From Octopus sinensis (taxonomy: Eukaryota): a DNA stretch of 64,000 nucleotides. The stretch spans positions 42,904,001-42,968,000 of the forward strand of contig NC_043012.1 in NCBI RefSeq assembly GCF_006345805.1, in the 5' to 3' direction. Under the pieces are notes generated by a model. The model was not told the origin of the DNA, searched no databases, and saw nothing but the letters and a program-made list of their open reading frames with translations. This document shows, in pieces, positions 2,640 to 33,321 of the stretch (position 1 is its first letter; every line of letters begins with the position of its first letter). The position numbers were made by a program, and so were the translations under genes.

Positions 2640-3110
2640 ATGGTGGAGTTGCTGTATACATCCGTGATGATCTCCCACCCCAGGTATTGCTGTCATACTC
2701 AAATTCGGTATGTGACACTTTAATTGTATGCATAAGACTACATAATATAGTCATATGCAATACATATTGCCCACCGGATGCTCCAAACCACATTGGCAAG
2801 TTTGAAGATTGCCTCACAAGAATTAAGGAAATCCTCATGAATCTGGAACACCATGTGACCACATTCCTTATGGGTGATTTCAGCTTCCCCAACGTCAAAT
2901 GGCCTGAAGGTCTCATACTCTCAGGAACGACTCATTGCAAGCAAGCACAGGTGGAGTCCCTGCTCAACCTCACTAATGCCTTATTCATGGAGCAAGCTGT
3001 ACTCAGACCAACTAGGGTGAAAAACATTCTGGATCTCTATTTCACGAACAATATGGACATCATTCATGATGTGAAAGTGACACTGACATTAGTCTCGGAT
3101 CACAACATAA
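2640..3110 (+). mobile_element. Non-LTR retrotransposon APE/EEP endonuclease fragment (CR1/L2/Jockey-like)
   Basis: YCPP...MGDFSFPNVKW...PTRVKNILDLYFTN motifs in ORF 2687-3154. Confidence 0.8.
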
Positions 3111-4679
3111 CAGAGAGAAGGAAAGAATGTAAGAGAATGGAGAAAGAAGATTAGTTAAAAATAGCAAAAAGTAACAAAATAATAAAAAATAATGTAAAAA
3201 TGAACAATAAAACCCTGAAGATATGAAGAAAGGGAATAAAGAAAAAGAAAAAAGAAAAAACAAAGATATAGAACAGTCAGTGGTCAGTGGAGATAATTTG
3301 AGAGTAGGAGTGGGGATAGAGAGAGAAAGGCATTATAGTGTAAATGATAGTGAAATGGGGGGGGGGTTAAAGGGTAGAGGGAAGACCAATGTGTAGTAGT
3401 AGCTTCGAATTGTGATGCAAAGATATGAAGGATTCAGGAAATAGCAGTTCAGTGGTCTGAGAAAATATATATGTGAAGATGTATATACATGTATATATCA
3501 GATAAGTTACATATACAATCCTTATTCGCATGTGTATGCCCTCATACATGCTTATATGCTCATCTGCGTGTATCATTGCCCCTGCATATACAGGTATATA
3601 TACCTTGCATGTGTATAAATGTTTACACATACCCACATGTATGCATACATGCATACCCTCACTCGTATGTATACATGTGCGCATGGGTGTGTACGTGTAT
3701 AGAGGTAAACGAATATAATCAGATGGTTGCATATGTGAGAAACTAGATAGGGGCTATGAGTTAGGGTGTAAATTTATGGGTTAATGGGATTACCTAATTA
3801 TTTCGGAAATGTACAGCATGGTCATTTTGACATTTGGATTTGTGATAGAATTTAAATGTGTGATAAAAGCAGTGGTTATGTTTATCGTTATGTTTATCAA
3901 GCAGTGTTGGAGGGTTTTGCTTTAATATTTAGAGTGTCTCCTTTGGGCAAAGCTTGCAGATTGAGCATTGACCTTGGTAGGGAAGTCCTGAGTCTAGTAT
4001 GGACCATGATAGAGTATAAGGTACATTTGCATTTTTGAGATGCTGTATGTGGTTGGCGAGTGTTGTAGATTTAACATACTGCAAGCTCACTGGTTAGATA
4101 ATAAAAAATAAGTAAATGAAAAAATTAGATTTCCTATATTCAGTTGAGTGGCTAGTGGCTGGAATGGTATCCAGCTGTTAAAAGATGTAATAAAGCTTCC
4201 CACTCATACAGCATTGAGAATTGAATTCAAGTTGGTGTTGAAGATAACAGGGTAATGAAATGGTATGAGTCATCGAAAATACGTTTAGTTTGTACCTGTG
4301 CATGTATGAAATTACACACACACACACACTGTGTATATATTTTGTATAAGTATATACATATATGTATGTATTTTGTATATGTATGTTTATGTGCATGTGT
4401 GTGCATATATATAGATATATAGTTGGAATTTACAGAAAAAAGATGTTCTGGTATTTGCTGAATTTTCTCTGGAGAACATTTTTTTTTTGTAGTTAGATCG
4501 CATGTGATATTCTAGTGTATGGTTATCCACCTAGTGGTTTATCCCTAAATATACATATGTATTGAAATTTTTTTTGATTTTTAAGATTTTTTATATATGC
4601 TAGGCTACTGGTTTTAAATTGATATTAAATTAATATTCAATTTATCTCCCTCATTATTTGAATTATATATATATATATG

Positions 4680-11397: not shown

Positions 11398-12720
11398 ACT
11401 TTGTTAACGCCAACATATCTTCGTCTGTCAGAGTTTCAGAGTGGGAATTGATGAAATTGTTGACCTCATCTTGCGTGAAGTTGTCAAAATATTCACCTCC
11501 AAGTAATTTTGCCAGTTTCAGCACATTGACAGCCTCGTGGTGAATATCTTTGGGAGAGAAGCCCTCGTAGTCCTGACACCCTTTGGCCATGCAATGAGTG
11601 TTTCTTGTTTCATGTCTTTAAGATTGTAGATAACTGACAGGCATGTTGCAATCATGAAATTACGCCAGTACACCTATAACTTGAAATTCTTGTCCATGTT
11701 CATTGCGTCCACAAGGTGTTGGTGAGAGTTCTGAGTATAGAGTGTCTTGATGGCACAGATCACGTCTTGATCGATAGGCTTGATGAGGGAGGTGGTGTTA
11801 GCAGGCAAGAACTCGACCTGGACTCCCTCGTGCTTCAAATCAAAAGAACGCCCACCAGCATTATCCATAGCAAGCAACACTTTGAATTCCATTTATACGT
11901 TTTGGAAGTATTCTTTGGTTTGAGGGATGAAGTCTTGGTGGGAGTAATTCAAAGTTAGAGCTTTGGTAATCCATGTGCATCCGGTGGACAGGCAGGAGGT
12001 TTTTATTTGTATTTTTGAAGGCTCTTGTGTTCTCGGACTTGTAGATAAGTCCTGGTTTTATCATGAAGCCAGCAGCATTGCCACATATAATTAGCACCAC
12101 TCTGTTTTTCTGTGCCTTAAATCCTGGTGCCCTGGCTTCGTCCATCATGTTGTATGTTCTGGAAGGCATCTTCTCCCAGTACAAGCCATTCTTGTCCATA
12201 TTGAAAACCTGTTCCTGCTTGTATCCCTTGTCCTCGATGATCTAACTGAAGGTTCCAAGGTACTTCTTGGTGGCTTCTTTGTCAGCTGATGCTGTCTCTC
12301 CATGCAGGGAAACACACTTTATTTTAAACCTTTTCTGGAAACGGTCAAACCATCCCTTGCTGGTTTGAAAATCTTTGGGCTCTGGTGCTGTCAGTGGTAT
12401 TGGTTGTGGTTCTCCAATACCTTCTGCTCCATCTCCTGCTATAATTTCCGTACTTTCTCGTAGTTGATGTTACCACTCAGTTACTGTTCCATAATGCCAA
12501 GGTAAATTTCATCCTGACAAAGTGTTTATTTCTCACTGTCGTTATCTTTGTGGCACTTTCACAGAAACTTACTGCTACAGTAGACCTAATCACTACCTCA
12601 TTCTTCTTTATGTAGTGTGTCATAACTTTTACCTTCCTGGAGCATGTCCAACAGGTGTACCTTCTCATTGAATGTCGTAACCTTTTTCTGGCGTTTAGGT
12701 TCACTGCCAGAAGCCTTAGG
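11398..12720 (-). mobile_element. Tigger/pogo-family transposase remnant
   Basis: SKGWFDRF (Tc5 HTH), MDKNGLYWEKMPSRTY, GNAAG, LLAMDNAGG, FLPANTTSLIKPIDQDVI. Multiple stops and frameshifts. Confidence 0.9.
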
Positions 12721-14437: not shown

Positions 14438-14708
14438 ATTATAATGTTAGTTCTCAGCAGAGGATCTTGCTGATACTCTAGGTTAAAAGGGTAGCTTGTC
14501 TCATACAACTCCTGAGAAATGAAACATTGAATGCAATTCAAAATGATTCAAGTGTATAGCATAAATACAGTGATTACTATGATATATTAAATTATATTAT
14601 GATATAGGTGGCCCCTTAGCAATTAAAATGTAAAGGCAAGTTAGTCAATGAAGGTACAAACTAGTAGCAGCAATTGCTAGAAATAAGAATGAAAAATGTA
14701 CATGTATG

Positions 14709-14784
<76 letters not shown>

Positions 14785-14787
<3 letters not shown>

Positions 14788-15340
14788 ATTCAGGCTGAAT
14801 TCCTGGTGGGCTGTTAAGAGTTTGTTTATGAGGTGCTGCATTTGCTTCTCATAGTGTGCTGCCAATACTACATTGTCCACAAACAACATTTCTCTGATGA
14901 GTATTTGATGAATCTGGATTTTGCTTTCAGCCTTGACAGACCAGATAGTTTCCTGTTTGATTTGATGTGGGGGTAGGCACCATCAGTTGACACTACAACT
15001 GCATTATTCAGCATCACTGCAAAGGGGATGCCAAACAGGGTGAGTGCAAAGACATAGCCCTGCTTTTCACCACTGCATATGTTGAATGCCTCCAATGAAA
15101 AGCCATCAAATTGAATGACACCTTCCATATCTAACTGAAATGATTGGACTATCCTGAGAAATCTTGGAGGACATTCAATCTTGGCAAGGATTTTGAATAG
15201 GCCATCTATTAACTAGCTCGAAATCCTTTGTGAGATGAATAAAGTTGATGTAGAGTGGTTGCCTTTGTTGTCAGCACTTCTGTAACTGTCAAAAAGAGAG
15301 GATCATGTTGAGATTCATGATATCCCCTCTCAGCAATTTT
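14785..15340 (-). mobile_element. Second RTE-clade (BovB-like) RT fragment
   Basis: SGEKQGYVFALTLFG...LFVDNVVLAAH, a decayed GVKQGCVLAPTLF / LFADDAAL. Confidence 0.7.
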
Positions 15341-15849
15341 ATGTAGTCTGTTATTATATATTTATATAATTATAATTATCATTAAAACCCACAAGTTTTG
15401 TGAAATACAGCTGCCCAGGGTTTCTTGGTTGAAATATTAATTCATTTTGCCATTTATCAAGCTATTTAATATGACAAGACAGTTTAACTGTTTTGAATGC
15501 ACATATAGAAAAAGACAGAGGAAAACAACTGTTTAGCAAACATAACCAGTATCTTACATATATCAAAATAATTTCAACCGGACTGCAATGGTTTATTATG
15601 TATCCAGTGGTCTATTTTTAATTTCTGCTAAGCTGTAATTTTTAAAATGCAGACATAAACGAAAAATTTTGTTTCTGGAATTTATACAGTGATTGGAGGT
15701 TAATAAGGTTTTAAGTTTTTGAAAAATATATATATAATTTTTTGTATATACAGGGTGTGTAAGATATTTGAGGACAGATTTATGTTTATAAAAAAACCCC
15801 AGATATATAATGAGAGCACAAACCTTTGCCATGGTCACACCAACATCCT

Positions 15850-16185
15850 CTCAACGATTAGCCAGAGATGATTTTTAAAATGAGAATATCTGAAATAAAT
15901 TTGACTGCTCTCACAAACAAGAATACTAAAAGTGAACCTGACGGCTCTCAAAAATTAAGTAAAAAAAAAAAAAACAGGAAAAAAAAATCTAGAATCCTTG
16001 TTGGGTACTGGATTGATCCCAAAATTAATCAATTCATGCCAGTCATGAGGCCAAAGATTCCTGAAAGTTTTATTCGAATCCATCCAGCGGTTCTTGAGAT
16101 ATTTTGTCCATGGACAAACAAACAAATAAATGTGACTGAAAATAATACCTCTGCCTTAGCGAAGGCAGAGGTAATAACAGATAAT
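15850..16185 (+). mobile_element. Possible non-autonomous Helitron/Helentron-type insertion ending in a 12-bp hairpin
   Basis: Perfect stem TACCTCTGCCTT-AGCG-AAGGCAGAGGTA at 16146-16173. The sequence is foreign to the mariner transposase; class assignment is inference. Confidence 0.4.
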
Positions 16186-16800
16186 AACTTTATTTATCAA
16201 AAAATTGCTATGAGGATAAAATTAAACCTTGTTTTCTATAATGTTATTCAACAAAGCCACTTTCAGCTTCAACAACTACTTCTATATGAGATCTAAATCA
16301 TCTATACGTTCGAATCAAGTGGTCCTGGTTCATTTTGTCATTACTCTGATATGGCAGCTTTCAAAGATATGTATTAGTCCAATGGCTTGAAATCTGGGGA
16401 ATTAGGAGGCCAAATGTTAGGGGTTATGTGATCATGAAAATTTTCAACCATCCATTCCTGTATTACTAGATCCATGTGTGATAGTGCAGAGTTTTACTGA
16501 AACACATATGGCCTTCCATTACATACACTGTCTATCCAGGGCTTAATAATTATTTCCAGGACCTCAATGTAGGCGGCCTTGTGGAAAGAAGTAAGGAGGC
16601 ATCACATGTCCTTCATTACTGACAAACCCTAAAACCATGACAGTTGCAGGAAATTTTGTATGCATAACACCTAGAACTTCAGAAGGGCCTGCACATAACT
16701 ATCTGTCATTTCATCTGTTAACTTTTTGATCTTGGTTGAAGTTTTTCTTGTTTGAGAAAAATCAAATCAAATCTTCTGCTGGATTTTACAGTTTGTTTAA

Positions 16801-19330
16801 CCCTTTCGTTACTATATTTCTGACCAAAATACACCCCTTATGTGTTTCAATTAATTTCTAACATAATCATAAATTTAGTCTGGTTTCATTAACCCTTTCG
16901 TTACCAAACCGCCCAAAGCCGCCCGAAAATAATTTTGGTTAATGTGACCAAACCGCCCGAATTTACCTATTCATATTTAAATGAGAATATCAGAGCAAAT
17001 CTCTTTAGTACATTCGTGAAAACACGTATTATACTTCGTAAACAGTTCAACTACAGTTTTGTACAAAAATCGAAGTGTAATTTTAATTCCGTCAATTTTG
17101 AGAGATTTTTTTCCGAAATTTGTTCCTATTGTGTTTTCAAAATTTGTAATTCTGACAAAAAATGGATACGAATTTCATTATATCAAGCAGCGAGTCAGAA
17201 TTCGAAGGATTTTCTACTGAAGACCTTCATAAATCTAACTCTATGATTGAAAAAAAAAAAGCACATGGTATTTGATAATGAATCTGATGTTTCATTTTCC
17301 GAAAGTGAAAACAGTGAATTCGAGAGCTCCGACAGCGATAAAGAAAACGAATTGGCACCTGAATGGAATGAAAATTTAAAAACTGTTTCTTTCGGTGATT
17401 TTTCTGAAGAAACTGGACCAAGCCACAGACTTTCCCAGAGGAGTAAAGCCTTAGACTATTTCTTTTTACTTTTTCGAATGAGCCTATTTGAAATCATTAC
17501 GGTGAAAACCAACCGTTACGCTAAACGTAAACAAAGCGAAAGAAACGATAGTTTGTGGTTTCCCATAACCTTAAATGAAATTAAGACTATTTTGCCGTAA
17601 ATATTATTATGGGTATCAGAAAGTTACCCAGAATAACAAATTCTATCGTAAAATTTTGTTGTATACCCAATTGAATATTAGCTAATAACCCATTTTCTAT
17701 AGCGATGTTTGAACAAAATTTTAATTTTATATTTTGTTGAATTTACCTGTATCTACCTGCAATTAGAGTCACTTTGTGACAAAAATTATAGTATAGAATT
17801 GGTTGAGAATATTTCATTAAATTATCTTCCAAAAATCAGATTAATATATTGATAAATAAAAAAGTTATAGTTGTTTAATGAAACCAGACTAAATTTATGA
17901 TTACGTTAGAAATTAATTGAAATACATAAGGGGTGTATTTTGGTCAGAAATATAGTAACGAAAGGGTTAAACAACTATAACTTTTTTATTTATCAATATA
18001 TTAACGGGAATTTTGGAAGATAATTTAATGAAATGTTCTCAACCAATTCTATACTATAATTTTTGTCACAAAGTGACTCTAATTGCAGGTAGATACAGGT
18101 AAATTCAACAAAATATAAAATTATTAAAATTTTGTTCAAACATCGCTATAGAAAATGGGTTATTAGCTAATATTCAATTGGGTATACAACAAAATTTTAC
18201 GATAGAATTTGTTATTCTGGGTAACTTTATGATACCCATAATAATATTTATGGCAAAATAGTCTTAATTTCATTTAAGGTTATGGGAAACCACTAACTAT
18301 CTTTTCCTTCGCTTTGTTTACGTTTAGCGTAACGGTTCGTTTCCGCCGTAATGATTTCAAATAGGCTCATTCGAAAAAGTAAAAAGAAATAGTCTAAGGC
18401 TTTACTCTTCTGGGAAAGTCTGTGGCTTGGTCCAGTTTCTTCAGAAAGTGACTCTAATTGCAGGTAGATACAGGTAAATTCAACAAAATATAAAATTATT
18501 AAAATTTTGTTCAAACATCGCTATAGAAAATGGGTTATTAACTAATATTCAATTGGGTATACAACAAAATTTTACGATAGAATTTGTTATTCTGGGTAAC
18601 TTTATGATACCCATAATAATATTTATGGCAAAATAGTCTTAATTTCATTTAAGGTTGTGGGAAACCACAAAGTATCCTTTCTTTCGCTTTGTTTACATTT
18701 TGCGTAACGGTTCGTTTCCGCCGTAATGATTTCAAATAGGCTCATTCGAAAAAGTAAAAAGAAATAGTCTAAGGCTTTACTCTTCTGGGAAAGTCTGTGG
18801 CTTGGTCCAGTTTCTTCAGAAAAATCACCGAAAGAAACAGTTTTTAAATTTTCACTCCATTCAGGTGCCAATTCATTTTCTTTATCGCTGTCGGAGCTCT
18901 TGGATTCACTGTTTTCACTTTCGGAAAATGAAACATCAGATTCATTATCAAATACCATGTGCTTTTTTTTTTTCAGTCATAGAGTTAGATTTATGAAGGT
19001 CTTCAGTAGAAAATCCTTCGAATTCTGACTCGCTGCTTGATATAATGAAATTCGTATCCATTTTTTGTCAGAATTACAAATTTTGAAAACACAATAGGAA
19101 CAAATTTCGGAAAAAAATCTCCCAAAATTGACGGAATTAAAATTACACTTCGATTTTTGTACAAAACTGTAGTTGAACTCTTTATGAAGTATAATACATA
19201 TTTTCACGAATGTACTAAAGAGATTTGCTCTGATATTCTCATTTAAATATGAATAGGTAAATTCGAGCGGTTTTGGGCGGCTTGGTCACATTAACCAAAA
19301 TTTTTTTCGGCCGGTTTGGTAACGAAAGGG
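16801..19330 (-). mobile_element. Non-autonomous piggyBac deletion derivative (outer copy) with a 375-bp internal tandem duplication
   Basis: TTAA target duplication (16797-16800 and 19331-19334), CCCTTTCGTTAC TIRs, acidic N-terminus plus LFEIITAETNRYA transposase fragment. Confidence 0.9.
16893..17966 (+). mobile_element. Non-autonomous piggyBac derivative (inner copy, same family, opposite orientation)
   Basis: TTAA at 16889-16892 and 17967-17970, same TIRs, ORF 17247-17600 is a piggyBac transposase N-terminus. Confidence 0.9.
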
Positions 19331-19816
19331 TTAAGAGCCTTTTAGATTTGATATAGTGATTTTCTTTTGCTTTTTCTGACAACTTGACCTTTCCTCATCA
19401 TATAAGACTTTTCGTGGACCATTCCCTCTAACACATGGAGATCTTTTGCAACTGATCTCATGGACTTTCTGGGATTGTAATCAATGGCCTGTTGCTGGAT
19501 AAATTCAGGTGTTCTGATGATTTCCGAGTGTTTAGAGTGCTGTTTATGCTTTGATACTGGTGATACATTTCCGTCTTCAGTCTGTAGCTCCTTACAAACT
19601 TTGTACATGATAAATGTAGCAACTTTTCAAAATCGAGATATTTCTAATTCGCTATGCTCAGCCTTTATAACCTCAATAACAACATGCTTCTTCATTATTA
19701 TTATTTTCTGAAACAAAAATTATACAGATTTAGATAAAAATGTAGCAATGACTCAAAAAAAATATGTCTTCAAATATCTTACTCACCTTGTATAAATATA
19801 TGTTTTTGAATTGCAG

Positions 19817-19895
19817 TTATGGACAATTGTGATATCAGTTTAAAAGTACAGGCAACTTCAGAACCAGACACGAACAAGAAAAATGTGGTTATATG
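19817..19895 (+). CDS. Myb: Myb exon a: (x)MDNCDISLKVQATSEPDTNKKNVVI
   Basis: ttgcag acceptor, gtaaat donor, open frame, phase 2 matches the next exon. No conserved motif of its own. Confidence 0.7.
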
Positions 19896-19981
19896 GTAAA
19901 TATATTTCTTTCTTTCTTTTCTACTTTTTGAAAAAGATATGAATTATTTTATAAAACTTAGTGCTTTTTCTTTTCTTACAG

Positions 19982-20115
19982 TTCATCTGATACCAGTACT
20001 TGTGGTGAAGATGTGGACAGTGGACTTATAGATTTCAACTCATTAGATCTGAATGATGTGACAGAAGATGATCCGAGTGTAACACCTAATAAATTTACAG
20101 GCTTAAATAAAAAAG
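19982..20115 (+). CDS. Myb: Myb exon b: CSSDTSTCGEDVDSGLIDFNSLDLNDVTEDDPSVTPNKFTGLNKK
   Basis: Strong polypyrimidine tract with cag, gtaaaa donor, phases 2/1 consistent with neighbours. Confidence 0.85.
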
Positions 20116-20560
20116 GTAAAAATAAATTTATTTTAATTAGTGTGAAGTGGAATAGTAACACCAGTTATCTTTTCAGTTCTGTCAATGGAATAAATGCTGT
20201 TTAGAATTATATAAAAATATTTGTTACTCATAAAATTACAATTTGTAATGTATATTATACTAGAATTCAAAATTGTAGTATATTATACTAGAACTCAAAA
20301 TTACTTGTCTTGCCAGTTACGGATCTTTACCTTTTGACTGGCAGATTTAGAAAATAATTTTTTGTAACTAAACAGTCAAACTTTGTATACTGGTAGAATG
20401 TGTCATATAAAACATCTTTTACTCTTAGCGTTTTTGAGAAAAGTTTTTTATTTATGAAGTTATTTTGTGTTAAAGTTGTCGTATTTCGGTAATTTCAACC
20501 AATCCATGATGTATATTCAGCTGAATAAAATTACTGCTGTTGTTTGTCAACAACTTCCGG

Positions 20561-20609
<49 letters not shown>

Positions 20610-21667
20610 CCACCCAATTAATGGCTCATATTTTAATCATTCAAATAATCCCGGGAACCAGCTCTAGGTTTGTTAGACCTCTTTAACGAAGCATTTACTT
20701 CACTATATTTACCAAATTAGTTTTGAGAGAATGATGTATAAGTATGGAAATGAACTTATCTTCAAAAAATAAATCATCCTGGAAATTATTCACATCATGT
20801 ACAATTGTTACATGAATGTCATCATCATAAATATGTTTGCTTTTCCAAGTTGCTACCATCCTATTGACCGAGGTTGCCGTGGTCTTTTCTGTAGGCTTTT
20901 CTTTCCACGGATAAACCTTATCTGCTCCATCCTTTACACTTTACATCATGACATTTCTGTGATACACGATCCCTATTGATTATTTTTTTCTTTCCCTTTT
21001 TTTCTTTTCTTTCCCTTTTACGATCACTTTTGATCAAAAACCTACATCACTTATTTTTTTCTCCCCAAGAAGAAAAAGCTCTACTTTGTAATCTGTCCTG
21101 TCTGTGTGCAGCCCTGTGTGGCTAATAAAGAAACATATTATACTAGAAATAGCAAGCACATCATGTGGATATATTTTAAAGGTATACAGCGTACAAAAGA
21201 GCCACATTGATAAATTTACCAGTGTAGCGATTTTTTTTGTGTTCCTGTTCATCATATAAGCTAAAATAATAAGAACAGTGGAGCTTATTGCAAAGGAATT
21301 AACTATTGAAAATATGTAAAGAGAGAGAGAGAGGCATTAAACAATTGTGTCTCGCTGTAAAATTTTTGAAACCCATTTGCATTTAATTAAAATTAATTGT
21401 CTAGCTGAAAAAAACTTAAAGGCCACATTTTGATAAAAAAGAAGAAATATTAATATTTTCATTTTTAATTATTTTCTAAGTTAATGGAAACTTTAATAAT
21501 TGCTTTCTTTTAGTAAAAGTTACATTATTCCATCTAACTAATAAGCAGCTCTCTCCATTTATAGTACAGGCATTATAAAATTGTTTGTTATAAAATTTTA
21601 TTTTTTAACCCAAAAAAGAATTTACCCTGTAATTCTCTTTGTCAAAATTCTTTTGGTCATTTAGCAG

Positions 21668-21798
21668 ATCTTCGGTTTGATGGCAGAGCCATTGATAAAT
21701 TAAAGTCCCCAGGGCGTTTGATACCAATTGTTTCTAAAGTGGCTTCTAAACTTTCTACACCACCAACAATACTTCGGAGAGGTAAACATCAGAAAAAG
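21668..21798 (+). CDS. Myb: Myb exon c: DLRFDGRAIDKLKSPGRLIPIVSKVASKLSTPPTILRRGKHQKK
   Basis: STPPxILR motif of Myb proteins. TAGCAG acceptor, gtaatt donor, phases 1/0. Confidence 0.9.
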
Positions 21799-23908
21799 GT
21801 AATTGATTCAATCCAAAACAGGTTGAAAATGTTTGAAATGTATAATTATTTTTGTATTTAGTATTTCAAATTTATTAATCAGTATATTCCCGTAAGTGGA
21901 ATGTTCGGTGTGCTGTTGTTGTCTCAGTCAAGTCACTGCATTCAGTCTTAAACAGCTTGTTATACAGATTCTTGTTTTATTTCTCTTTAACATCTGTCTT
22001 GTATTCATTCTGTTTTATTGTATTATATGCAATTTACCCAAAAAGACAGTTTTCTGTTGATGATAGCTATTTGTTTACTCACTTTTATGTTAAGTATATT
22101 CCATATGTTTCATTTCATTGTGAAATAATCAAAAATCCATACTGGTTTTGTAAAACAGCCTGAAGTTATTTATTTATTAATAAATAAATATATTTGAATA
22201 CAAGTTAGCAACAAATGGTCTTAACATAAATATTTGGGAGGATTTTTCTCAGAAAACTACTACAGTTACAGCTAAATGCATTGAAATGTAAAATTATTTC
22301 TTATGAAATGAATTCACCTGACATGTAAAAAGGAATGGTCATGCACATTCTGAATTTTCACTTCAACTTGAGTAAATATAAACAGATACTTAATATAATA
22401 GGCAGAGGTGTTGCTATGTGGTTAAGAAGCTTACATTCCAACCATGTAGTTTGGGGTTGAGTTTAATATTACTGTAGAGTTACTATCACTATCTGAAATT
22501 GAAACATCTGCTATTGCTTCTTCTTTTGAAAATCTTGATCATTGTCTGTTGCACTTGTCTGTAGCTTTCTTTTTCTGAAAGGCTCCTGTGTCTTTATGTA
22601 TTGTGAAGAATTTCTGCTGCTTTCTATTCCAAATTGAATTCTCAATAAAATCACTCAAATTTGGGTAGGGTGGGGCCCTATTTTAAGCATGATAATCTGA
22701 AATAAACAAAAATACACAGTGAAAACAAAACTTGTAGCATAAAATAATGGGCTGAAATCTATACTTCCATATGAGCAAAATCAAATAAAGTTAATTCCAA
22801 AATAAGCACCAAAGTTTAGAATAAGAAAAATTATAATTATGGTGGTACAGATACTATGGATTGTCCAAGTAAAGCATTTGATAGATACCATGCTGTGTAG
22901 AATTCATAGAAAACTTTGTGTTGATTTACGTTGAGGGATGAAAGAAAGAAATGATTCAAGCAGTTACTGTTTGTCTGAGAGAAAATATAAAAGTGACTTC
23001 ACATTAGTGACAAAATTGTGAATATGAAACAAAGTAGTGAGGCTTAATGTGGAGTGAAGGAGATAAAAGGCAATGAACAGTGTGTGCTGCAAGTAGGGTG
23101 AAGAGTAATGTGGGATGAAATTAAATGAGCAGGGTGGGAGGTGGGGACACATGTTTGTAACAAGATTAAGTTGAGATAAATGATAGTATTGAGAATGTAT
23201 AGAAGCGAACATGTGGACAATAATAAGAATAAGAGAGAGACACACACATAAGAAGAAGAGGTGGTCTTAGAGGAAGCTTTCAGAAAAATTAAATCAGTAA
23301 GGAGTAGTAAAGAAACCAATGAATAAAGAGGTAGTAAACTGTGGTTGGAATAGCAATGGGAAATTTGACTAAAGTTCAGAGTATAAGTAATGCTTAATTT
23401 ATTCAATAGAACTAACATCCAAAAATTTCTTAAATATTCAAATCAGTCTACCTGATTTAGTTGAATCCTAATCTGAGTGGCTTTAAATAGAATTTTTCAG
23501 TGAGAGTTGAAGTAGGTAGTGTTATGACACTTGGAACTATATTCTAGTCAATCACCTTTTACTGCTCATAGTGAAATTGTATAAACATGACAAGCATTTG
23601 CAACTGTCTTATGTATCTAATAAATGTATTTGATTTATAAATGTAGCAGTTACTAAAATTTATGAATATACTCCATAGTAAAGTTGAATATTGTATTTTA
23701 ACAATTCATATAATTTTGTTAAATATATTTTGATACAAATTAATGTCATTGAGAATTTCTAAACATATTTTGAGGAATATTCAAAAAGAATTCTTATAAG
23801 GATATGGCACATAAGTGGTGTATATAACATGAGAAACACTGTAAAAATAATAAGAAATCAGCTACCTATATTTCCTATTACAATAATGTATTTGTCTATA
23901 TTTTTCAG

Positions 23909-24319
23909 CAATCTTATTCTGGATCCTTATCAGCATCTTATCATCAAATTTGTGATGATAAAATGAAAGAAGAAATGAATCAATACCTTCCAAAGTCAAA
24001 AGAAAAGTGCAGAGAATTTGAATCCCCTCCTTTGGCTAGTTGTGATTTGGGAAAAGAGTCCAGTTCTGATTGTTACACACCTCAACATAAGAATGATTCT
24101 CCTGTAGTACATAAAATAATTCATATCAAAGAAGAACCCGCTGAATCTACTGGGGATTTTATTGACAATACCTCGGAAGAAATTAAAAAAGAAGAAATGG
24201 TTTTAGATAATGATTTTGATTTTGAAAATCTTAACCCTTTATTAGGATTGCAACGGAAAGATGTCAACAGAACACCAAGTGTAACACCCATAAAAAATCT
24301 ACCCTTTTCACCATCACAG
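23909..24319 (+). CDS. Myb: Myb exon d (137 codons) ending in TPIKNLPFSPSQ
   Basis: Conserved Myb TPxKxLPFSPSQF motif. ttttcag acceptor, gttagt donor, phase 0/0. Confidence 0.95.
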
Positions 24320-27300
24320 GTTAGTGTACATGAATATAACGTGTGTGTGTGTGTGTGTGTGTCTTAGGTTTGTGACAAGTCTTTAGGCTTTTTAGGCTAG
24401 AGCTTATCCCAGTTTTCTTGATGTGTAAGCAAGCAAGAAAACAACACTCTCTCTTGGACAAAACATTAGTCAATTGCAAGGTCAATTCCCTGCCGGAGCT
24501 GGTTCTCATTTTCAACAGTACAGACTGGAACAGTATGAAATGAAGTGCTGTCCAGACTGGGAACTGAAACTATGACCTTATGATTATGTGTTCAATTCCT
24601 TATCCACTAGGCCACATGCCTATACACACACTTACTCTGATAAGAAAGAAACATGGAAATGCTACTATGAGAGGAAGCTGAGTTCAGATAAAGAGCCTTC
24701 TCCATTGAAACTCAACAGAAGTACCAGCCATTCAAGCTGACAGCAGAGTAATAGAGAACATGGTAAAGGATATGAAGGTAGAGAAATAAGGATATGAAGG
24801 TACTTAAAATATCTGGCAATATAGAGTACATGATAGTCACTCAAATAGCAAATCATGTAATGCAGTGTTACAGGACCATTACAAACTGCTACAAGGGCAA
24901 GGGAGGTGCACTAGAGAAAGGTAACAAAGCAACAAGCAGTTTGACCAGGTTATGAAAGTTACAGAGTGTGTTATAGTGACAGGATTAGTCTAGGTGAGGT
25001 GTAGTTTAGCTTTGTCCCAGGAAGAGGGACCTTGTGAGAGAACTGGATGAGAAATACTAAGGAATATGTTCTTGTATCTACTTAGCGTTTGTAGTCCCTT
25101 ACACTATTATTTGGTGTTTTCTCAGAAAACCAAGAATAAATGAATGGCTTGTGAGGATTGTAGGAGCTCTCAGTAAGATGAGAATTAGCAACTATTTATT
25201 GATGAACTTAGTGTACAGATGAGGATACATCAGAGCTCAGTTCTCAGCTTTATTCTATTTATTGTAGTCCTTTAAGCTGTAATAAAGACATTTAAAACCA
25301 GCTCTCTGTAGGAAGTCCTCTATGCTGAAGACTTAGTCTTATAGTAGACTTGGCAGAACTGAAAATGAAATTCCAGGCATGGAAGCAAAATCGAAAATAG
25401 AAAGGCTTTAAAGTAAACTTGGCAAAAACAAAGGTTTTAGTACGTTGTAAAGAGGCCAAGACTCTTATAGTTTCAGGGAAATGGCTGTGCTCTGCCTTCA
25501 GAAAACAAGTTGGTAGAAATTCTGTGCCGAGTGTAATCAATGGATATGCAAAAGTTGTAGTGGGTTTAAAGACAGCCTAACAAAGAAAGTAGATGTTAGA
25601 TGCAACAGGTACACTGGAACAATAAGAGTAATTGGGAAATAGATTCTGCCAACTGCCCAAGTGTCTCCCTTAAAATGTTTGATAAGTTTGCTACCTGGGT
25701 GGATGTTCAGAAAGTGAGGCAGCTAGAATAACAACAGGTTTGAGAAAGTCCAAGGTGCTGTTAATCCTGTTAGCAACAAGGGGTTATCCCTCAGGATCAA
25801 AGGCAGATTGTATGATGATTGTGTGCAAAGTGTACTGCTGCACAAAACAAACATGGACCTTGAGGGTGGAAGGCATATAAAGACTTGAAAGAAATGAGGT
25901 GAGCATACTTTGTAGGAGATGCCATGTTAGTGTGCAGGAAGAACAAAATATAATTGAGTTGAGAGATAAACTGGATGTAATGGGAATCTTTTGTAGTGTG
26001 CAGGAGAGAAGACTGCACTAGTATGGGCATGTGATATGAATGGAGGATGACAGCTGCATAAGCAAGTGCCAAGCACTCAAATGAAGGAAGACTTGAGATG
26101 ATAAAAATGACCTCAAGATGTTATATCTGACAAGGAGATGGCTGAAAATATGTTGATTGGTGATATGCATTACTGTAAAAAAACCCCCAAAAAACCACCC
26201 AGCCTCCTGTGCAGGCTTAGTGCATGATCCACTTCCACATACACCCCATCTCTGCCCACTCGTCTATTCTGTACTTTCTGGGCATGTATCTCCAGCCATA
26301 TCCTGTCCACCATATAGCCTTGCATCCCATTTTACTGCTTGTTTATTCTGTATTCTCTCATCTTTTCTGCTCACTGTACCAAGACACTCAGAAATGGGAG
26401 GTGGGGGTAGACTTGGATTTATACATACTGAATACTTCCACTACCTATATCTTGCTTCCTTTCCTCCTTCCAAATCATTAGGATGATGAGTGTAAAAAGT
26501 ATGTGAGATTGGAATGTAATGTAGGAGAGGTCTCTATTAAATTAAGTTCTACAGAAACCAAACAGATGGTAACTTAAAGAGATTGAATGAGCTAGAAATG
26601 GTAGATTCCACTGTTGAAGAAGTTACCCCTCTTAGGAAGGGACCCTGTAATGAGAGAAGCATAGAAACATTGAAAATGGAAAATAATGCCTAGCACAGGA
26701 GTGAAGTCAAAAGGTAGTAGAATGAATATTGTCAAGACCTGTTCTTGTCATTACTCAACCCCATTGCAATTATAATCATGGGCATTCCAACCATGACCAT
26801 ACCATTATAAGATAGATTTGATTTAAATGGTTAAAGAAATTTTCACATTGGTAGTGAAACAAGTTGAGTTGAGAAACAAAAAGTTTTCAAGAGGTTTTAT
26901 TGCAAAAATCTAGTGTGCAATTGAAAATAGAAGAAAGTTCAGAGTTCATCAAAAGCAATGTTACTTACATTGTGGTTGAGGTGTTATGGGTAGGAAAATT
27001 CTAGAAATTTTTGTATAAATCTTATCACTGTTGAATTAGAATGCTTGATTATAGGTTGAGAAGTGAGAGGGTTTGAAGGCATGCTTTTCTTTGCTGATAG
27101 TCATCATTACATGCATTGAAATGCTGGATGGTGACTTCCTTTGGGTTTTCTGGGAGGTGTTCATCATCTGGTAGCTATAGCTGAATTACTTGGGGGAATT
27201 GGGATTGTGAGGTTTGGTTATGAGGTATTAGAGATGTTATAGGATAGTACTAGTCATCTGCTTTAGCATCTTAATTGGGAAACATATGTTGCCATACTTA

Positions 27301-30149: not shown

Positions 30150-32035
30150 CAGTTGAGGGAACCTGTGGAAGAGGTAGACCCAGGAAAACCTGGGACGAGG
30201 TGGTGAAGCACGACCTTCGAACTTTAGGTCTCACTAAGGAAATGTCTAGAGACCGAGACCTATGGAAGTATGCTGTGCGTGAGAAGACCCGGCAAGACTA
30301 GTCAGGCCATAACCCGTGGCCCCTACCTGGGACGTAGTCAGTCCTCCTGTGCATACCTTCCTTCTTGTGACACTTATGAAGACCTGTTGAGGCAAGTGAA
30401 AATCAAATCAAAATAGATGAACATCAGTGGAATTGTATTCTTTGTGGTACCAGTGCCGGTGGCACACAAGAAAACCACCCAAACGTGGCCGTAGCCAGTA
30501 CCGCATCGACTGGCCTCCGTGCTGTGGGCACAACAAACACCATCTGATCGTGGCCGTTCGCCAGCCTCATCTGGCACCTGTGTCGGTGGCACATAAAAAC
30601 ACCATCCGAAGACCCGGCGACGTAGTCAGTTCACCTGTGCATACCTTCCCTCTTATGACACTTGTGAAGACCTGTTGAGGCAAGTGTGTGACACTTGTGA
30701 AGACCTGTTGAGGCAGAGGCAAGTGTGTGACACTTTGTGAAGACCTGTTGAGGCAGAGGCAAGTGTGTGACACTTGTGGAGACCTGTTGAGGCAAGTGTG
30801 TGACACGTGTGACACTTGTGTAGACCTGTTGAGGCAAGTGAAAATCAAATCAAATCAAATCAAACCAAATCAAAATAGATGAACATCAATGGAATTTGTA
30901 TCTTTGTGGTACCAGTACCGGTGGCACACAAGAAAACCATCCGAACGTGGCCGTAGCCAGTACCGCATCGACTGGCCTCTGTGATGTGGGCACATAACAA
31001 ACACCATCCGATCGTGGCCGTTCGCCAGCCTCATCTGGCACCTGTGTCGGTGGCACATAAAAACACCAACCGAAGACCCGGCAAGACTAGTCAGGCCATA
31101 ACCCGTGGCCCCTACTTGGGACGTAGTCAGTCCACCTGTGCATACCTTCCTTCCTTCTTGTGACACTTGTGAAGACCTGTGAAGACCTGTTGAGGCAAGT
31201 GAAAATCAAATCAAATCAAATCAAAATAGATGAACATCAATGGAATTTGTATCTTTGTGGTACCAGTGCCGGTGGCACACAAGAAAACCATCCGAACGTG
31301 GCCGTAGCCAGTACCGCATCGACTGGCCTCCGTGCTGTGGGCACGTAACAAACACCATCCGATCGTGGCCGTTCGCCAGCCTCATCTGGCACCTGTGTCG
31401 ATGGCACATAAAAACACCATCCGAAGACCCGGCAAGACTAGTCAGGCCATAACCCGTGGCCCCTACCTGGGACGTAGTCAGTCCACCTGTGCATACCTTC
31501 CTTCTTGTGACACTTGTGAAGACCTGTTGAGGCAAGTGAAAATCAAATCAAAATAGATGAACATCAATGGAATTTGTATCTTTGTGGTACCAGTGCCGGT
31601 GGCACACAAGAAAATCATCCGAACGTGACCGTAGCCAGTACCGCATAGACTGGCCTCCGTGCTTTGGGGACGTAACAAACACCATCCGATCGTGGCCGTC
31701 CGCCAGCCTCATCTGGCACCTGTGTCGGTGGCACATAAAAACACCATCCGAGCGTGGCCGTCTGCCAGCCTCGTCTGGCACCTGTGTCGGTGGCACATAA
31801 AAAACACCATCCGAGCGTGGCCGTTCGCCAGCCTCGTCTGGCACCTGTGTCGGTGGCACATAAAATCACCCACTACACTCTCGGAGTGGTTGGCGTTAGG
31901 AAGGGCATCCAGCTGTAGAAACACTGCCAGATCTGACTGGCCTGGTGCAGCCTTCGGGCTCCCCAGACCCCAGTTGAACCGTCCAACCCATGCTAGCATG
32001 GAAAACGGACGCTAAATGATGATATTGATGATGAT
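30148..32035 (+). mobile_element. RTE 3' end with tandemly amplified 3' UTR
   Basis: ORF end AVEGTCGRGRPRKTWDEVVKHDL...REKTRQD-stop, four copies of the first 3' UTR block, nested ~30-45 bp repeats, (GAT)n tail. Confidence 0.92.
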
Positions 32036-32402
32036 GAAACAGGTATTATAAACATGTGGTGTAAAATTAAGATTTATTTTATTTTATTTTTCCTCCTAAA
32101 TATTTTATCATGGATTTAGCAGGTAACAAAGTGGTTTTCAAATATGATTTTCTTATTCACTGTTTTTTTTACATAATAAATGCATTAAAGAGGAGTAGAA
32201 AAAAAAAACTTCCTAGACATTGGAAAACTTTACAATAACAGCATCTCAAATACCTTAAGATGCTGTTATTTGGGGAATTTATTGTTCTGCATAATTTCAT
32301 ACATTGTGTTAGTGGGAGGTTCAATACAATTGTGGAACTCTTGGTAAATGAACATTTTATGAACCAGATTCAAAGTTTCCTTTTTTTAATTCTTATCTAC
32401 AG

Positions 32403-32529
32403 TGAGTGTAAATCTCTTCAAAAGACTCCAGTAATCTGTAGAGATGTTTTAGATACTAAACCACGTACACCAACACCATTCAAAAATGCCTTGGCAGAAG
32501 TGGAGAAGCGTAATGGGCCAATTAAATCT
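32403..32529 (+). CDS. Myb: Myb exon f: IECKSLQKTPVICRDVLDTKPRTPTPFKNALAEVEKRNGPIKS
   Basis: Hallmark PRTPTPFKNAL motif of the Myb conserved C-terminal (MuvB-binding) region. Phases 2/0. Confidence 0.97.
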
Positions 32530-33321
32530 GTAAGCTTTGCTCTTCATAATTTTTATCCTTATTTTACAACTTTAGTATTTTAAATTTTACTCTGATAATT
32601 ATTTATACTGTTTCATTAACTAATTATTTATATTCATTAACTTATTTGTTAATGAAACACCTTAAATGCCTATGCTGTCAAAGTTCTCAAAATCTGCTGG
32701 ATTTAATCAAAACATTGTCTTAAATCAGAACTTCTGTGGTATTTTTCAAATCCTTTTATTTAGCTTCAGATTTAGTAAATGCAACTCTGAATTCAATGCT
32801 TATTCAAATGCAGCATTTTGTTATTCTCTTCCAAGTATTTTGATAAATTATTCTCTGAGGTCATTTAATTTATCAGCCTTTTGAGGTCAGTAATAAAGAA
32901 GCACTAATTGAGGGTGAGTGATTTGCCATATTATTACCAATAATAGCAGCAGCAGTAGTACTAAAAGAGGTATATGAGGGTAATGAATATATAGGACCAT
33001 TTGGCAGTGTGATAAACTGATTGGGGTGTACAGAAAAGGTGATGTGCCAAAGGGAGAGGCCACTATGAACAATCATGAAGTCACTTCTGAGATAAATGCA
33101 GAGAAAAAGTTTTTGTTACTCTTGTTCTTGTCCTATACTGTAACTCTGTAATTTATATCTTCTGAATAACTCATTCTTATATGGTGATATTTAACTAAAA
33201 TTTATATAACTTCATATTTTATTGATTTTTGCCTGTACTTTGGAGCAGTTTTGAGACAAAACTTATATTTTGTGTTTGTGAAAGTACCTTTTGTTAAATT
33301 GTGTTCCAAGTACTGCTTTAA

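What the first reader, a model, noticed from the sequence alone, without database searches (positions are those of the whole stretch)
15751..19790. Russian-doll transposon nest: mariner > piggyBac(-) > same piggyBac(+), creating a ~1 kb fold-back
Seen: the outer piggyBac splits the mariner transposase exactly at a TTAA (minus strand AGGCTC-TTAA-ACAAACTG rejoins). A second copy of the same element sits in a TTAA 88 bp inside the first, in opposite orientation. Result: 16893-17878 is the reverse complement of 17971-19330 (with a 375-nt bulge) across an 88-nt spacer, and the copies look highly similar, so recent. Established: long intronic dsRNA is a substrate for ADAR, which is exceptionally active in coleoids, and long inverted repeats are unstable. 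Inference: a strong hyper-editing or small-RNA hairpin ending under 500 nt from a Myb exon, and evidence of self-targeted local hopping.
Basis: partly seen in the sequence, partly recalled or inferred. Interest (0 to 1): 0.75.

Follow-up and report, generated by a model that had tools for sequence, protein, structure and literature searches.

The report
Transposon inside transposon inside transposon
An old, dead Tc1/mariner transposon in an intron of a Myb-family gene was hit by a small piggyBac-type element, which was then hit by a second, opposite-facing copy of the same family, leaving a real ~1 kb inverted repeat that is an ordinary kind of genomic fossil.

Summary
A degenerate Tc1/mariner relic (15751-19790, TA duplication) is split at one TTAA by a non-autonomous piggyBac-type element (16801-19330, minus orientation). 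That element is split at an internal TTAA, 88 bp from its end, by a 1,074-bp copy of the same family in the opposite orientation (16893-17966). All four piggyBac ends carry a perfect 12-nt terminal repeat and TTAA. The arms predict a ~960-bp RNA duplex (MFE -1673 kcal/mol) ending 486 nt upstream of a conserved Myb-family exon.

Corrections:
- The outer element has DD37D spacing (maT-like), so it is not mariner in the strict sense.
- The two piggyBac copies differ by 27 substitutions (2.5%), two 10-bp indels, a 3-bp indel and a 375-bp tandem duplication. They are moderately young, not fresh.
- Self-targeted local hopping is one of two equally viable origins and cannot be decided without other family copies.
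- ADAR editing, small RNAs, transcription of the intron and the coleoid origin could not be tested here.

The closest known analogue is maize "double Ds". Inverted-repeat dsRNA loci are reported as abundant in octopus. This is a well-read but ordinary nested-transposon locus.

The parts
15749..15750 (.). TA target-site duplication, left, of the Tc1/mariner relic
   Evidence: Sequence; the matching TA is at 19791-19792.
15751..16796 (-). Tc1/mariner (DD37D, maT-like) relic, left part. It holds the left TIR (15751-15781), 3' non-coding sequence and the catalytic and C-terminal half of the transposase, with many stops and frameshifts.
   Evidence: The stitched translation is 54% identical over 100% of its length to 345-aa DDE_3 transposases (E 2.9e-105). 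It also matches the Sleeping Beauty catalytic domain (E 1.6e-4).
16797..16800 (.). TTAA, left copy of the target-site duplication of the outer piggyBac-type element
   Evidence: Removing 16801-19334 restores one TTAA and an uninterrupted transposase alignment.
16801..16888 (-). 88-nt 3'-end segment of the outer piggyBac-type element. It starts with the TIR CCCTTTCGTTAC.
   Evidence: Reverse complement of 17879-17966 with 2 mismatches.
16889..16892 (.). TTAA: the internal target site of the outer element, and the left duplication of the inner insertion
   Evidence: The inner copy keeps the equivalent, unoccupied TTAA at 17875-17878.
16893..17966 (+). Inner piggyBac-type non-autonomous element, 1,074 bp. 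It has 12-nt perfect TIRs, three subterminal AAACCGCCC-like 10-mers at the 5' end, and a relic of the transposase N-terminus (about 17162-17675).
   Evidence: (DDE_Tnp_1_7 E 9.3e-8, profile positions 2-58 of 349).
17967..17970 (.). TTAA, right duplication of the inner insertion
17971..19330 (-). Remainder of the outer piggyBac-type element (1,360 nt). With 16801-16888 and one TTAA it makes a 1,452-bp element.
   Evidence: 27 substitutions over 1,064 aligned positions against the inner copy.
18061..18810 (-). 375-bp tandem duplication inside the outer element (two copies, junction at an AAA microhomology). This is the 'bulge' of the fold-back.
   Evidence: 11 mismatches in 375 ungapped positions; TRF score 1451.
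19331..19334 (.). TTAA, right copy of the target-site duplication of the outer element
19335..19790 (-). Tc1/mariner relic, right part: the N-terminal DNA-binding half of the transposase and the right TIR (19760-19790)
19791..19792 (.). TA target-site duplication, right
19817..19895 (+). Predicted Myb-family coding exon (..MDNCDISLKVQATSEPDTNKKNVVI..). Its acceptor lies 26 nt from the end of the relic and 486 nt from the nest.
   Evidence: The acceptor position and the MDNC motif are conserved in L001. Splice sites are predicted from sequence, not from RNA.
19982..20115 (+). Next predicted Myb-family exon (SSDTSTCGEDVDSGLIDFNSLDLNDVTEDDPSVTPNKFTGLNKK)
   Evidence: tblastn to L001 681-785, 54% identity, E 2.8e-7.

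Best explanation
This is the product of three successive cut-and-paste insertions, all now inert.

1. A Tc1/mariner-superfamily element (DD37D, maT-like) inserted at a TA in an intron of a Myb-family gene and decayed.
2. A roughly 1.1-kb internally deleted, non-autonomous piggyBac-type element inserted at a TTAA inside the relic's transposase gene, in minus orientation.
3. Another member of the same piggyBac family inserted, in the opposite orientation, into a TTAA 88 bp from the 3' end of the first. Because that site is so close to the end, almost the whole element (982 of 1,074 bp) became the arms of an inverted repeat with an 88-nt spacer (96 nt if the two flanking TTAAs, which pair, are counted).

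At about the same time or soon after, the outer copy gained a 375-bp tandem duplication by slippage at a short microhomology.

Shown: the anatomy, the family assignments and the order of events. Inferred: the locus has no selected function; if the intron is transcribed, the RNA folds into a ~960-bp imperfect duplex of the kind ADAR enzymes edit. Whether the inner copy came from the outer copy itself (a hop into the sister chromatid's copy) or from another family member is open. I put the self-hop at about 0.4.
For: - All four piggyBac-type ends carry the perfect 12-nt terminus CCCTTTCGTTAC / GTAACGAAAGGG next to TTAA.
- Deleting the inner copy plus one TTAA gives a complete element. Deleting that plus one TTAA gives a Tc1/mariner relic whose translation aligns without a gap across the junction (KALKQT against KRLLNK) to full-length 340-349-aa transposases.
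- The piggyBac relic matches DDE_Tnp_1_7 above Pfam's cut-off.
- Decay follows the nesting order. The outermost element has many stops and frameshifts, its stitched translation is 54% identical to its best intact relative, and its TIRs are 87% alike. The two piggyBac copies are 97.5% alike.
- In the duplicated segment both outer copies share 6 substitutions and 1 indel against the inner copy, and have 3 and 6 private changes. The duplication therefore belongs to the outer lineage and is nearly as old as the split.
- Fold: MFE -1673 kcal/mol, 957 pairs between the arms, longest uninterrupted helix 246 bp, similar on either strand.
- Myb context.
Against: - There are no reads to confirm the assembly.
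- No other copy of either family is in the window, and none could be retrieved elsewhere.
- No upstream Myb exon is in the window. 'Intronic' rests on the fact that Myb DNA-binding repeats are N-terminal and must therefore lie upstream.
- The nest could have formed elsewhere and moved here as one composite using the outer ends. The data do not exclude that order.
Confidence: 0.85

Rival explanations
1. Self-insertion in the strict sense. After replication, the outer element excised from one sister chromatid and reinserted into the copy on the other. The two copies were then identical at birth, and all differences arose in place. This would be a natural piggyBac counterpart of maize double Ds.
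For: - Same family, opposite orientation, both complete.
- Branch lengths fit a clock. About 1.3-1.4% per lineage since the split and about 1.2% since the duplication explain every difference without any pre-existing divergence.
- Double-Ds elements are said to form often because Ac transposase prefers local transposition (PMC7584900).
Against: - piggyBac is reported to show much weaker local hopping than Sleeping Beauty (PMC3952818).
- The copies differ in the arrangement of the subterminal 10-mers (2+1 against 1+2), which needs two separate 10-bp indels.
- Nothing distinguishes this from a hit by an unrelated family member. A rough estimate from general knowledge makes the two routes about equally likely for a family of around a thousand copies.
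Confidence: 0.4
2. Assembly artefact: a fold-back chimera from a long read, or a misjoin through a repeat.
For: Palindromic chimeras do occur in long-read data, and no reads are available here.
Against: - The arms differ by 27 substitutions and four indels, including a 375-bp duplication. Chimeric fold-backs have identical arms.
- All junctions fall exactly at complete TIRs with TTAA duplications, not at arbitrary points.
- Misjoins through repeats occur inside homologous sequence, not at element ends.
Confidence: 0.04
3. The ~2.4-kb fold-back (16893-19330, with two identical 5' ends) is the native long-inverted-repeat form of the element, or it arose by template switching during replication rather than by a second insertion.
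For: Fold-back elements and palindromic non-autonomous elements exist. One example is the palindromic Harbinger repeat of frog noted in PMC5625713.
Against: - It leaves 16801-16888 plus a TTAA unexplained. That segment is 98% identical to the reverse complement of the spacer, and it is foreign to the Tc1/mariner relic, whose alignment closes perfectly only when it is removed too.
- The inner unit is a complete element with unlike 5' and 3' ends and its own TTAA duplication.
Confidence: 0.03
4. The nest is functionally co-opted: a hairpin-RNA or small-RNA source, or a hyper-edited structure that regulates use of the Myb exon 486 nt downstream.
For: - A very stable predicted duplex on either strand.
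- Octopus is reported to have exceptionally high hyper-editing, linked to abundant long near-perfect dsRNA (PMC5625713). Repeats are the main ADAR targets across animals (PMC9989829).
Against: - No expression, editing or small-RNA data.
- No Rfam family matches the region.
- The distant orthologous contig L001 shares no DNA similarity with the window outside Myb exon blocks in the 13.9 kb fetched, and holds only 584 nt of the intron upstream of this exon. So conservation of the nest could not be assessed.
- The substitution pattern between the arms is unremarkable: 17 transitions in 27, with no A/G bias.
- About 0.4% of random octopus loci lie in such structures (PMC5625713), so one near an exon is expected by chance.
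Confidence: 0.08

Closest known systems
Maize 'double Ds' (hAT superfamily): one Ds inserted in inverted orientation into another copy of itself
   Same: A non-autonomous cut-and-paste element sits inside a same-family copy in the opposite orientation. Four intact termini lie close together, and the result is a long inverted repeat. Such nests are attributed to local transposition (PMC7584900) and are thought to be selected against because they break chromosomes (PMC3260210).
   Different: The superfamily differs (piggyBac: TTAA target, seamless excision). The copies here are 2.5% diverged and no longer identical. No evidence of breakage or aberrant transposition can be obtained from the sequence, and origin by a local hop is unproven.
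piggyBac superfamily non-autonomous (internally deleted / MITE-like) elements
   Same: TTAA duplication, short TIRs starting CCC and ending GGG, unlike subterminal regions at the two ends, and a retained 5' fragment of a DDE_Tnp_1_7 transposase gene.
   Different: No catalytic core and no autonomous partner was found. The family is not identifiable in the collections searched. The same 12-nt terminus also ends an otherwise unrelated family in host-associated metagenome contigs.
maT (DD37D) family of the Tc1/mariner superfamily
   Same: TA duplication, ~31-nt TIRs, and a ~345-aa transposase with an HTH N-terminus and DDE_3 core. There are 37 residues between the second and third catalytic positions, and the third is D. 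The maT/DD37D and MLE/DD34D classes are as listed in bioRxiv 10.1101/2022.10.13.512200.
   Different: This copy is dead: N replaces the first and second catalytic D, and there are many stops and frameshifts. The family assignment rests on spacing and homologues, not on a phylogeny.
Intronic inverted-repeat dsRNA substrates of ADAR (e.g. inverted Alu pairs in primates; repeat-derived dsRNA in octopus)
   Same: Two oppositely oriented copies of one repeat would lie in the same pre-mRNA and predict a long, nearly perfect duplex (PMC5625713, PMC9989829).
   Different: The arms come from a nest rather than from two separate neighbouring insertions, so the spacer is only 88 nt. Editing here is untested.

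Membership tests
piggyBac superfamily | TTAA target-site duplication | tested here: met
   TTAA flanks both the outer element (16797-800 / 19331-34) and the inner one (16889-92 / 17967-70). Removing each element with one TTAA restores the host sequence.
piggyBac superfamily | Short terminal inverted repeats beginning 5'-CCC and ending GGG-3' | tested here: met
   A perfect 12-nt CCCTTTCGTTAC / GTAACGAAAGGG at all four ends.
piggyBac superfamily | Encodes, or derives from, a DDE_Tnp_1_7 transposase gene | tested here: met
   PF13843 E 9.3e-8, 32.2 bits against a 22.4-bit cut-off, profile positions 2-58 of 349, after bridging one frameshift. Without bridging the score is 14.8 bits, below the cut-off.
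piggyBac superfamily | Catalytic DDD core present (autonomous element) | tested here: not met
   Only the first ~58 profile positions survive and the rest is deleted. The elements are non-autonomous, which does not bar family membership.
piggyBac superfamily | Seamless excision restoring a single TTAA | not testable with these tools
   Needs empty-site alleles or an excision assay.
Tc1/mariner superfamily | TA target-site duplication and TIRs | tested here: met
   TA at 15749-50 and 19791-92. TIRs 15751-15781 and 19760-19790 are 87% alike over 31 nt.
Tc1/mariner superfamily | DDE_3-type transposase with an HTH N-terminus | tested here: met
   The stitched relic gives E 2.9e-105, 54% identity and 100% coverage to 345-aa proteins carrying PF13358 and PF13384/PF01498. 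It is colinear with them and matches Sleeping Beauty at E 1.6e-4.
mariner sensu stricto (MLE, DD34D) | 34 residues between the second and third catalytic residues, the third being D | tested here: not met
   The spacing is 37 in the relic and in all aligned homologues. The third residue is D, giving DD37D (maT-like).
Double-Ds-like inverted self-nest | A same-family element inserted in opposite orientation inside another copy, all termini intact | tested here: met
Double-Ds-like inverted self-nest | Inner copy derived from the outer copy by local transposition | tested here: inconclusive
   The divergence is compatible with this but not diagnostic. No third copy is available to polarise the changes.
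Double-Ds-like inverted self-nest | Chromosome breakage or aberrant transposition | not testable with these tools
   Needs genetics or population structural-variant data.
ADAR hyper-editing / hairpin-RNA locus | Long near-perfect intramolecular duplex | tested here: met
   957 pairs between the arms, helices up to 246 bp, MFE -1673 kcal/mol, z = -72 against shuffles.
ADAR hyper-editing / hairpin-RNA locus | Lies inside a transcribed unit | tested here: inconclusive
   Myb-family exons lie downstream on the + strand. No upstream exon is in the window, and there are no RNA data.
ADAR hyper-editing / hairpin-RNA locus | Clusters of A-to-G mismatches in RNA, or small RNAs from the arms | not testable with these tools
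   No transcriptome access.
Myb transcription-factor gene | Conserved C-terminal Myb region (Cmyb_C) | tested here: met
   PF09316 E 3.4e-12, 46.7 bits against a 27.7-bit cut-off, in the + strand ORF 32260-32583 (the conserved exon block is about 32400-32534). The PFSPSQ motif lies at the end of the exon block near 24320, inside ORF 23963-24367.
Myb transcription-factor gene | R1-R2-R3 Myb DNA-binding repeats | tested here: not met
The repeats presumably lie upstream of the window.

The most novel reading that the evidence does not exclude
The nest is a natural piggyBac counterpart of maize double Ds. In this reading it formed when an element hopped into its own sister-chromatid copy. While transposase was present it served as a substrate for aberrant transposition or breakage. 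Today it yields a hyper-edited or small-RNA-producing hairpin within Myb pre-mRNA that influences the exon 486 nt downstream.
Probability: 0.07. Interest if true: 0.5.

Novelty: new member of a known kind. Interest (0 to 1): 0.2.

Why it matters
The value is mainly as a clean worked example.
- The nest gives an unambiguous relative timeline of three transposon families in this genome.
- It shows that a piggyBac-type family was mobile after the DD37D element died.
- It marks a specific, easily assayed intronic site where a ~1-kb dsRNA should form in a Myb-family transcript.

If the source is an octopus-like genome, it is one of very many such sites (PMC5625713). It would serve as a convenient test locus, not as a discovery. 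Same-family inverted nests are of some interest for genome stability, by analogy with double Ds. The persistence of this one through about 2.5% divergence suggests it has been tolerated.

Tried and rejected
- Other copies of the piggyBac-type element:
  - None elsewhere in the window.
  - No protein relative in the 5.8-billion-protein index.
  - No exact 22-mer match in the metagenome contigs.
  - The 16-mer TTAACCCTTTCGTTAC hit more than 120 contigs, but these belong to an unrelated family with no further similarity by blastn or tblastn. The one contig with both ends (L010) has no ORF of 100 aa or more.
- Organism identity:
  - The Myb exon query found only one distant orthologous piece (P0001, 58% identity), from an unnamed ENA metagenome contig.
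  - An exact look-up of a window reverse-transcriptase ORF found nothing.
  - 'Coleoid' therefore stays unverified.
- Orthologous empty site: L001 begins only 584 nt upstream of the exon, so the intron cannot be compared.
- Pfam on raw three-frame translations of the Tc1/mariner relic gave nothing. Only a frame-stitched query worked.
- Myb DNA-binding exons: none in the window.
- Known structured RNAs: no Rfam match in 15000-21000.
- The bacterial promoter/terminator scan is uninformative for a eukaryotic intron.
- Autointegration of a single excised element (PMC3952818) was considered and rejected. It gives circles or inversions of one copy, not two complete copies with four ends.
- Mutational signature: the spectrum shows no A/G bias, and 7 of 17 transitions lie in CpG context. 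Neither is informative.
Full report
**1. The observation**

I read 15400-20300 and ran repeat detection on 14500-21500.

| Coordinates | Feature |
|---|---|
| 15749-50 | TA |
| 15751-16796 | Tc1/mariner relic, left part |
| 16797-16800 | TTAA |
| 16801-16888 | 88-nt segment S, beginning CCCTTTCGTTAC |
| 16889-92 | TTAA |
| 16893-17966 | 1,074-bp unit, beginning CCCTTTCGTTAC and ending GTAACGAAAGGG |
| 17967-70 | TTAA |
| 17971-19330 | 1,360-nt segment, ending GTAACGAAAGGG |
| 19331-34 | TTAA |
| 19335-19790 | Tc1/mariner relic, right part |
| 19791-92 | TA |

- BLAST of the 1,074-bp unit against the window finds only itself, its reverse complement in 17967-19319, and S.
- The unit's last 88 nt (17879-17966) are the reverse complement of S with 2 mismatches.
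- So 16801-16888 + TTAA + 17971-19330 is a second, minus-oriented copy of the same element. It is interrupted at an internal TTAA by the plus-oriented copy.
- The inner copy still carries the equivalent unoccupied TTAA at 17875-78.
- That TTAA is one of 15 in the outer element, so the choice of site needs no special explanation.
- Because it lies 88 bp from the end, almost the whole element became inverted-repeat arms.

**2. How alike are the two copies?**

A global alignment gives 27 substitutions in 1,064 aligned positions (2.5%; 17 are transitions, and there is no A/G asymmetry). It also gives four indels:

- Two 10-bp indels rearrange three subterminal AAACCGCCC-like 10-mers (2+1 in the inner copy, 1+2 in the outer).
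- One 3-bp indel.
- A 375-bp tandem duplication in the outer copy (TRF 18066-18822, 2.0 copies, 97% matches). Its junction is at an AAA microhomology.

In a three-way alignment of the duplicated segment, the two outer copies share 6 substitutions and the 3-bp indel against the inner copy. They carry 3 and 6 private changes.

- The duplication therefore arose in the outer lineage and is nearly as old as the inner/outer split.
- The nest is moderately young, and much younger than its host relic, but it is not fresh.

**3. What the elements are**

*The inner and outer pair: non-autonomous piggyBac-type elements.*

- They show the piggyBac hallmarks: TTAA duplication and CCC...GGG termini.
- They keep the 5' end of a transposase gene. 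Bridging one frameshift gives a DDE_Tnp_1_7 match at E 9.3e-8, 32.2 bits against a 22.4-bit cut-off, covering profile positions 2-58 of 349. The unbridged ORF scores below the cut-off.
- The catalytic core is deleted, so they are non-autonomous.

*The outermost element: Tc1/mariner superfamily, maT-like.*

- It is flanked by TA and has 31-nt TIRs.
- Raw frame translations hit nothing in Pfam.
- A piece of it matches the Sleeping Beauty catalytic domain.
- A frame-stitched translation finds 98 proteins. The best is 54% identical over 100% of the query (E 2.9e-105). They are about 345 aa long and carry DDE_3 plus HTH domains.
- The alignment runs without a gap across the TTAA junction (KALKQT opposite KRLLNK). 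This confirms a precise insertion.
- It also shows 37 residues between the second and third catalytic positions, with D as the third. That is DD37D, the maT class, not DD34D mariner (classes as listed in bioRxiv 10.1101/2022.10.13.512200).
- This copy has N at the first two catalytic positions and many stops and frameshifts.

**4. Gene context**

- A + strand ORF (32260-32583) carries Cmyb_C (E 3.4e-12, above the cut-off).
- The only external relative of the exon set is a 123-aa piece from an ENA metagenome contig.
- That contig (L001) holds orthologous exons in the same order. They include one that begins ...cag|TGATGGACAATTG, against ...cag|TTATGGACAATTG at 19817 here. So the exon and its acceptor are conserved.
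- The nest ends 486 nt upstream of this exon, and the relic ends 26 nt upstream.
- No Myb DNA-binding exon is in the window. 'Intronic' is therefore an inference from the N-terminal position of that domain in Myb proteins.
- L001 starts 584 nt upstream of the exon, so the orthologous intron cannot be compared.

**5. Consequences**

- As RNA, 16701-19430 folds at -1673 kcal/mol (+ strand) or -1666 kcal/mol (- strand).
- There are 957 pairs between the arms and helices up to 246 bp. One copy's worth of the 375-nt duplication (part of each copy) is left out of the main duplex.
- The central 861 nt score z = -72 against shuffles.
- No Rfam family matches the region.
- Published work supports the general premise:
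  - Hyper-editing sits mainly in repeats that pair with nearby inverted copies.
  - Octopus bimaculoides has an exceptionally high hyper-editing rate.
  - About 0.44% of random octopus loci lie in long near-perfect dsRNA structures (PMC5625713; see also PMC9989829).
- The same figures mean such a locus is common, not exceptional.
- Whether this one is transcribed or edited, and whether the window is from a coleoid, could not be tested.

**6. Origin of the inner copy**

- The nest proves only that one family member inserted into another.
- A hop from the outer copy into its sister-chromatid copy fits the branch lengths. It has a precedent in maize double Ds, said to form through local transposition (PMC7584900) and to be selected against for breaking chromosomes (PMC3260210).
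- Against that, piggyBac is reported to hop locally much less than Sleeping Beauty (PMC3952818), and the two copies differ in subterminal repeat layout.
- Without other family members the changes cannot be polarised, and none could be retrieved.
- Autointegration of a single excised element (PMC3952818) cannot give two complete copies.
- A native long-TIR fold-back leaves S unexplained.
- An assembly chimera would have identical arms and arbitrary junctions.

**7. Verdict**

- The functional and 'self-targeting' inferences are plausible but untested.
- In kind this is a nested-transposon locus with a known analogue. It is a new instance, not a new phenomenon.
- If the window does come from an octopus, piggyBac families are listed among the recently active DNA transposons of O. 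vulgaris (PMC13282606). That would fit, but the species is unknown.

Noticed in passing
window 19760-19816: The right TIR of the Tc1/mariner relic ends 26 nt before the 3' splice site of the conserved Myb-family exon (19817). Branch-point-like motifs cttAc and ctcAc (A at 19781 and 19785) lie inside the TIR, so the old transposon may now supply the intron's branch site.
   Followed up: partly
window 19896-19981 vs L001 585-786: The window has a predicted 86-nt GT-AG intron containing stop codons. It splits what is a single continuous exon in the distant orthologous contig, so an intron was gained or lost between the two lineages.
   Followed up: partly
window 21665-21800: A block 79% identical in DNA to L001 2349-2484, lying between recognised Myb exons. 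It is probably another conserved exon of the same gene.
   Followed up: no
window 16146-16173: A perfect 12-bp stem with a 4-nt loop (TACCTCTGCCTT CGCT AAGGCAGAGGTA) lies inside the 3' non-coding part of the Tc1/mariner relic. That part is about 500 bp, unusually long for a ~345-aa transposase element, and might hide a further small insertion.
   Followed up: no
window 16906-16958 and 19265-19317: Three AAACCGCCC-like 10-mers occur only at the 5' end of the piggyBac-type element, arranged 2+1 in one copy and 1+2 in the other. They are candidate transposase-binding repeats, and show that such repeats shift by whole units.
   Followed up: partly
loci L002-L121 (e.g. L010 2036-4192): The 16-mer TTAACCCTTTCGTTAC also ends an abundant, otherwise unrelated TTAA-flanked repeat family in JGI metagenome contigs from a handful of recurring projects (contig prefixes Ga0056131, Ga0049107, Ga0209781 and others). 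The same 12-nt terminus is thus shared across distant piggyBac-like lineages.
   Followed up: partly
window 30852-31751: A 351-bp tandem array (2.7 copies, 93% matches) in a GC-rich (~50%) island, with nested 62-63-bp sub-repeats. It generates a series of spurious ~100-aa ORFs.
   Followed up: no
window 2687-3154, 11861-12199, 36240-37292, 57251-57541, 60481-62115: Other transposon relics are scattered through the window:
- LINE-type endonuclease (Exo_endo_phos_2) at 2687-3154 and 60481-60834.
- Reverse transcriptase (RVT_1) at 36240-37292 (-) and 61267-62115 (+).
- A pogo/Tigger-like DDE_1 fragment at 11861-12199, at 21.2 bits, just under Pfam's 22-bit cut-off.
- A Tc1 HTH_Tnp_Tc3_2 fragment at 57251-57541.
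   Followed up: partly
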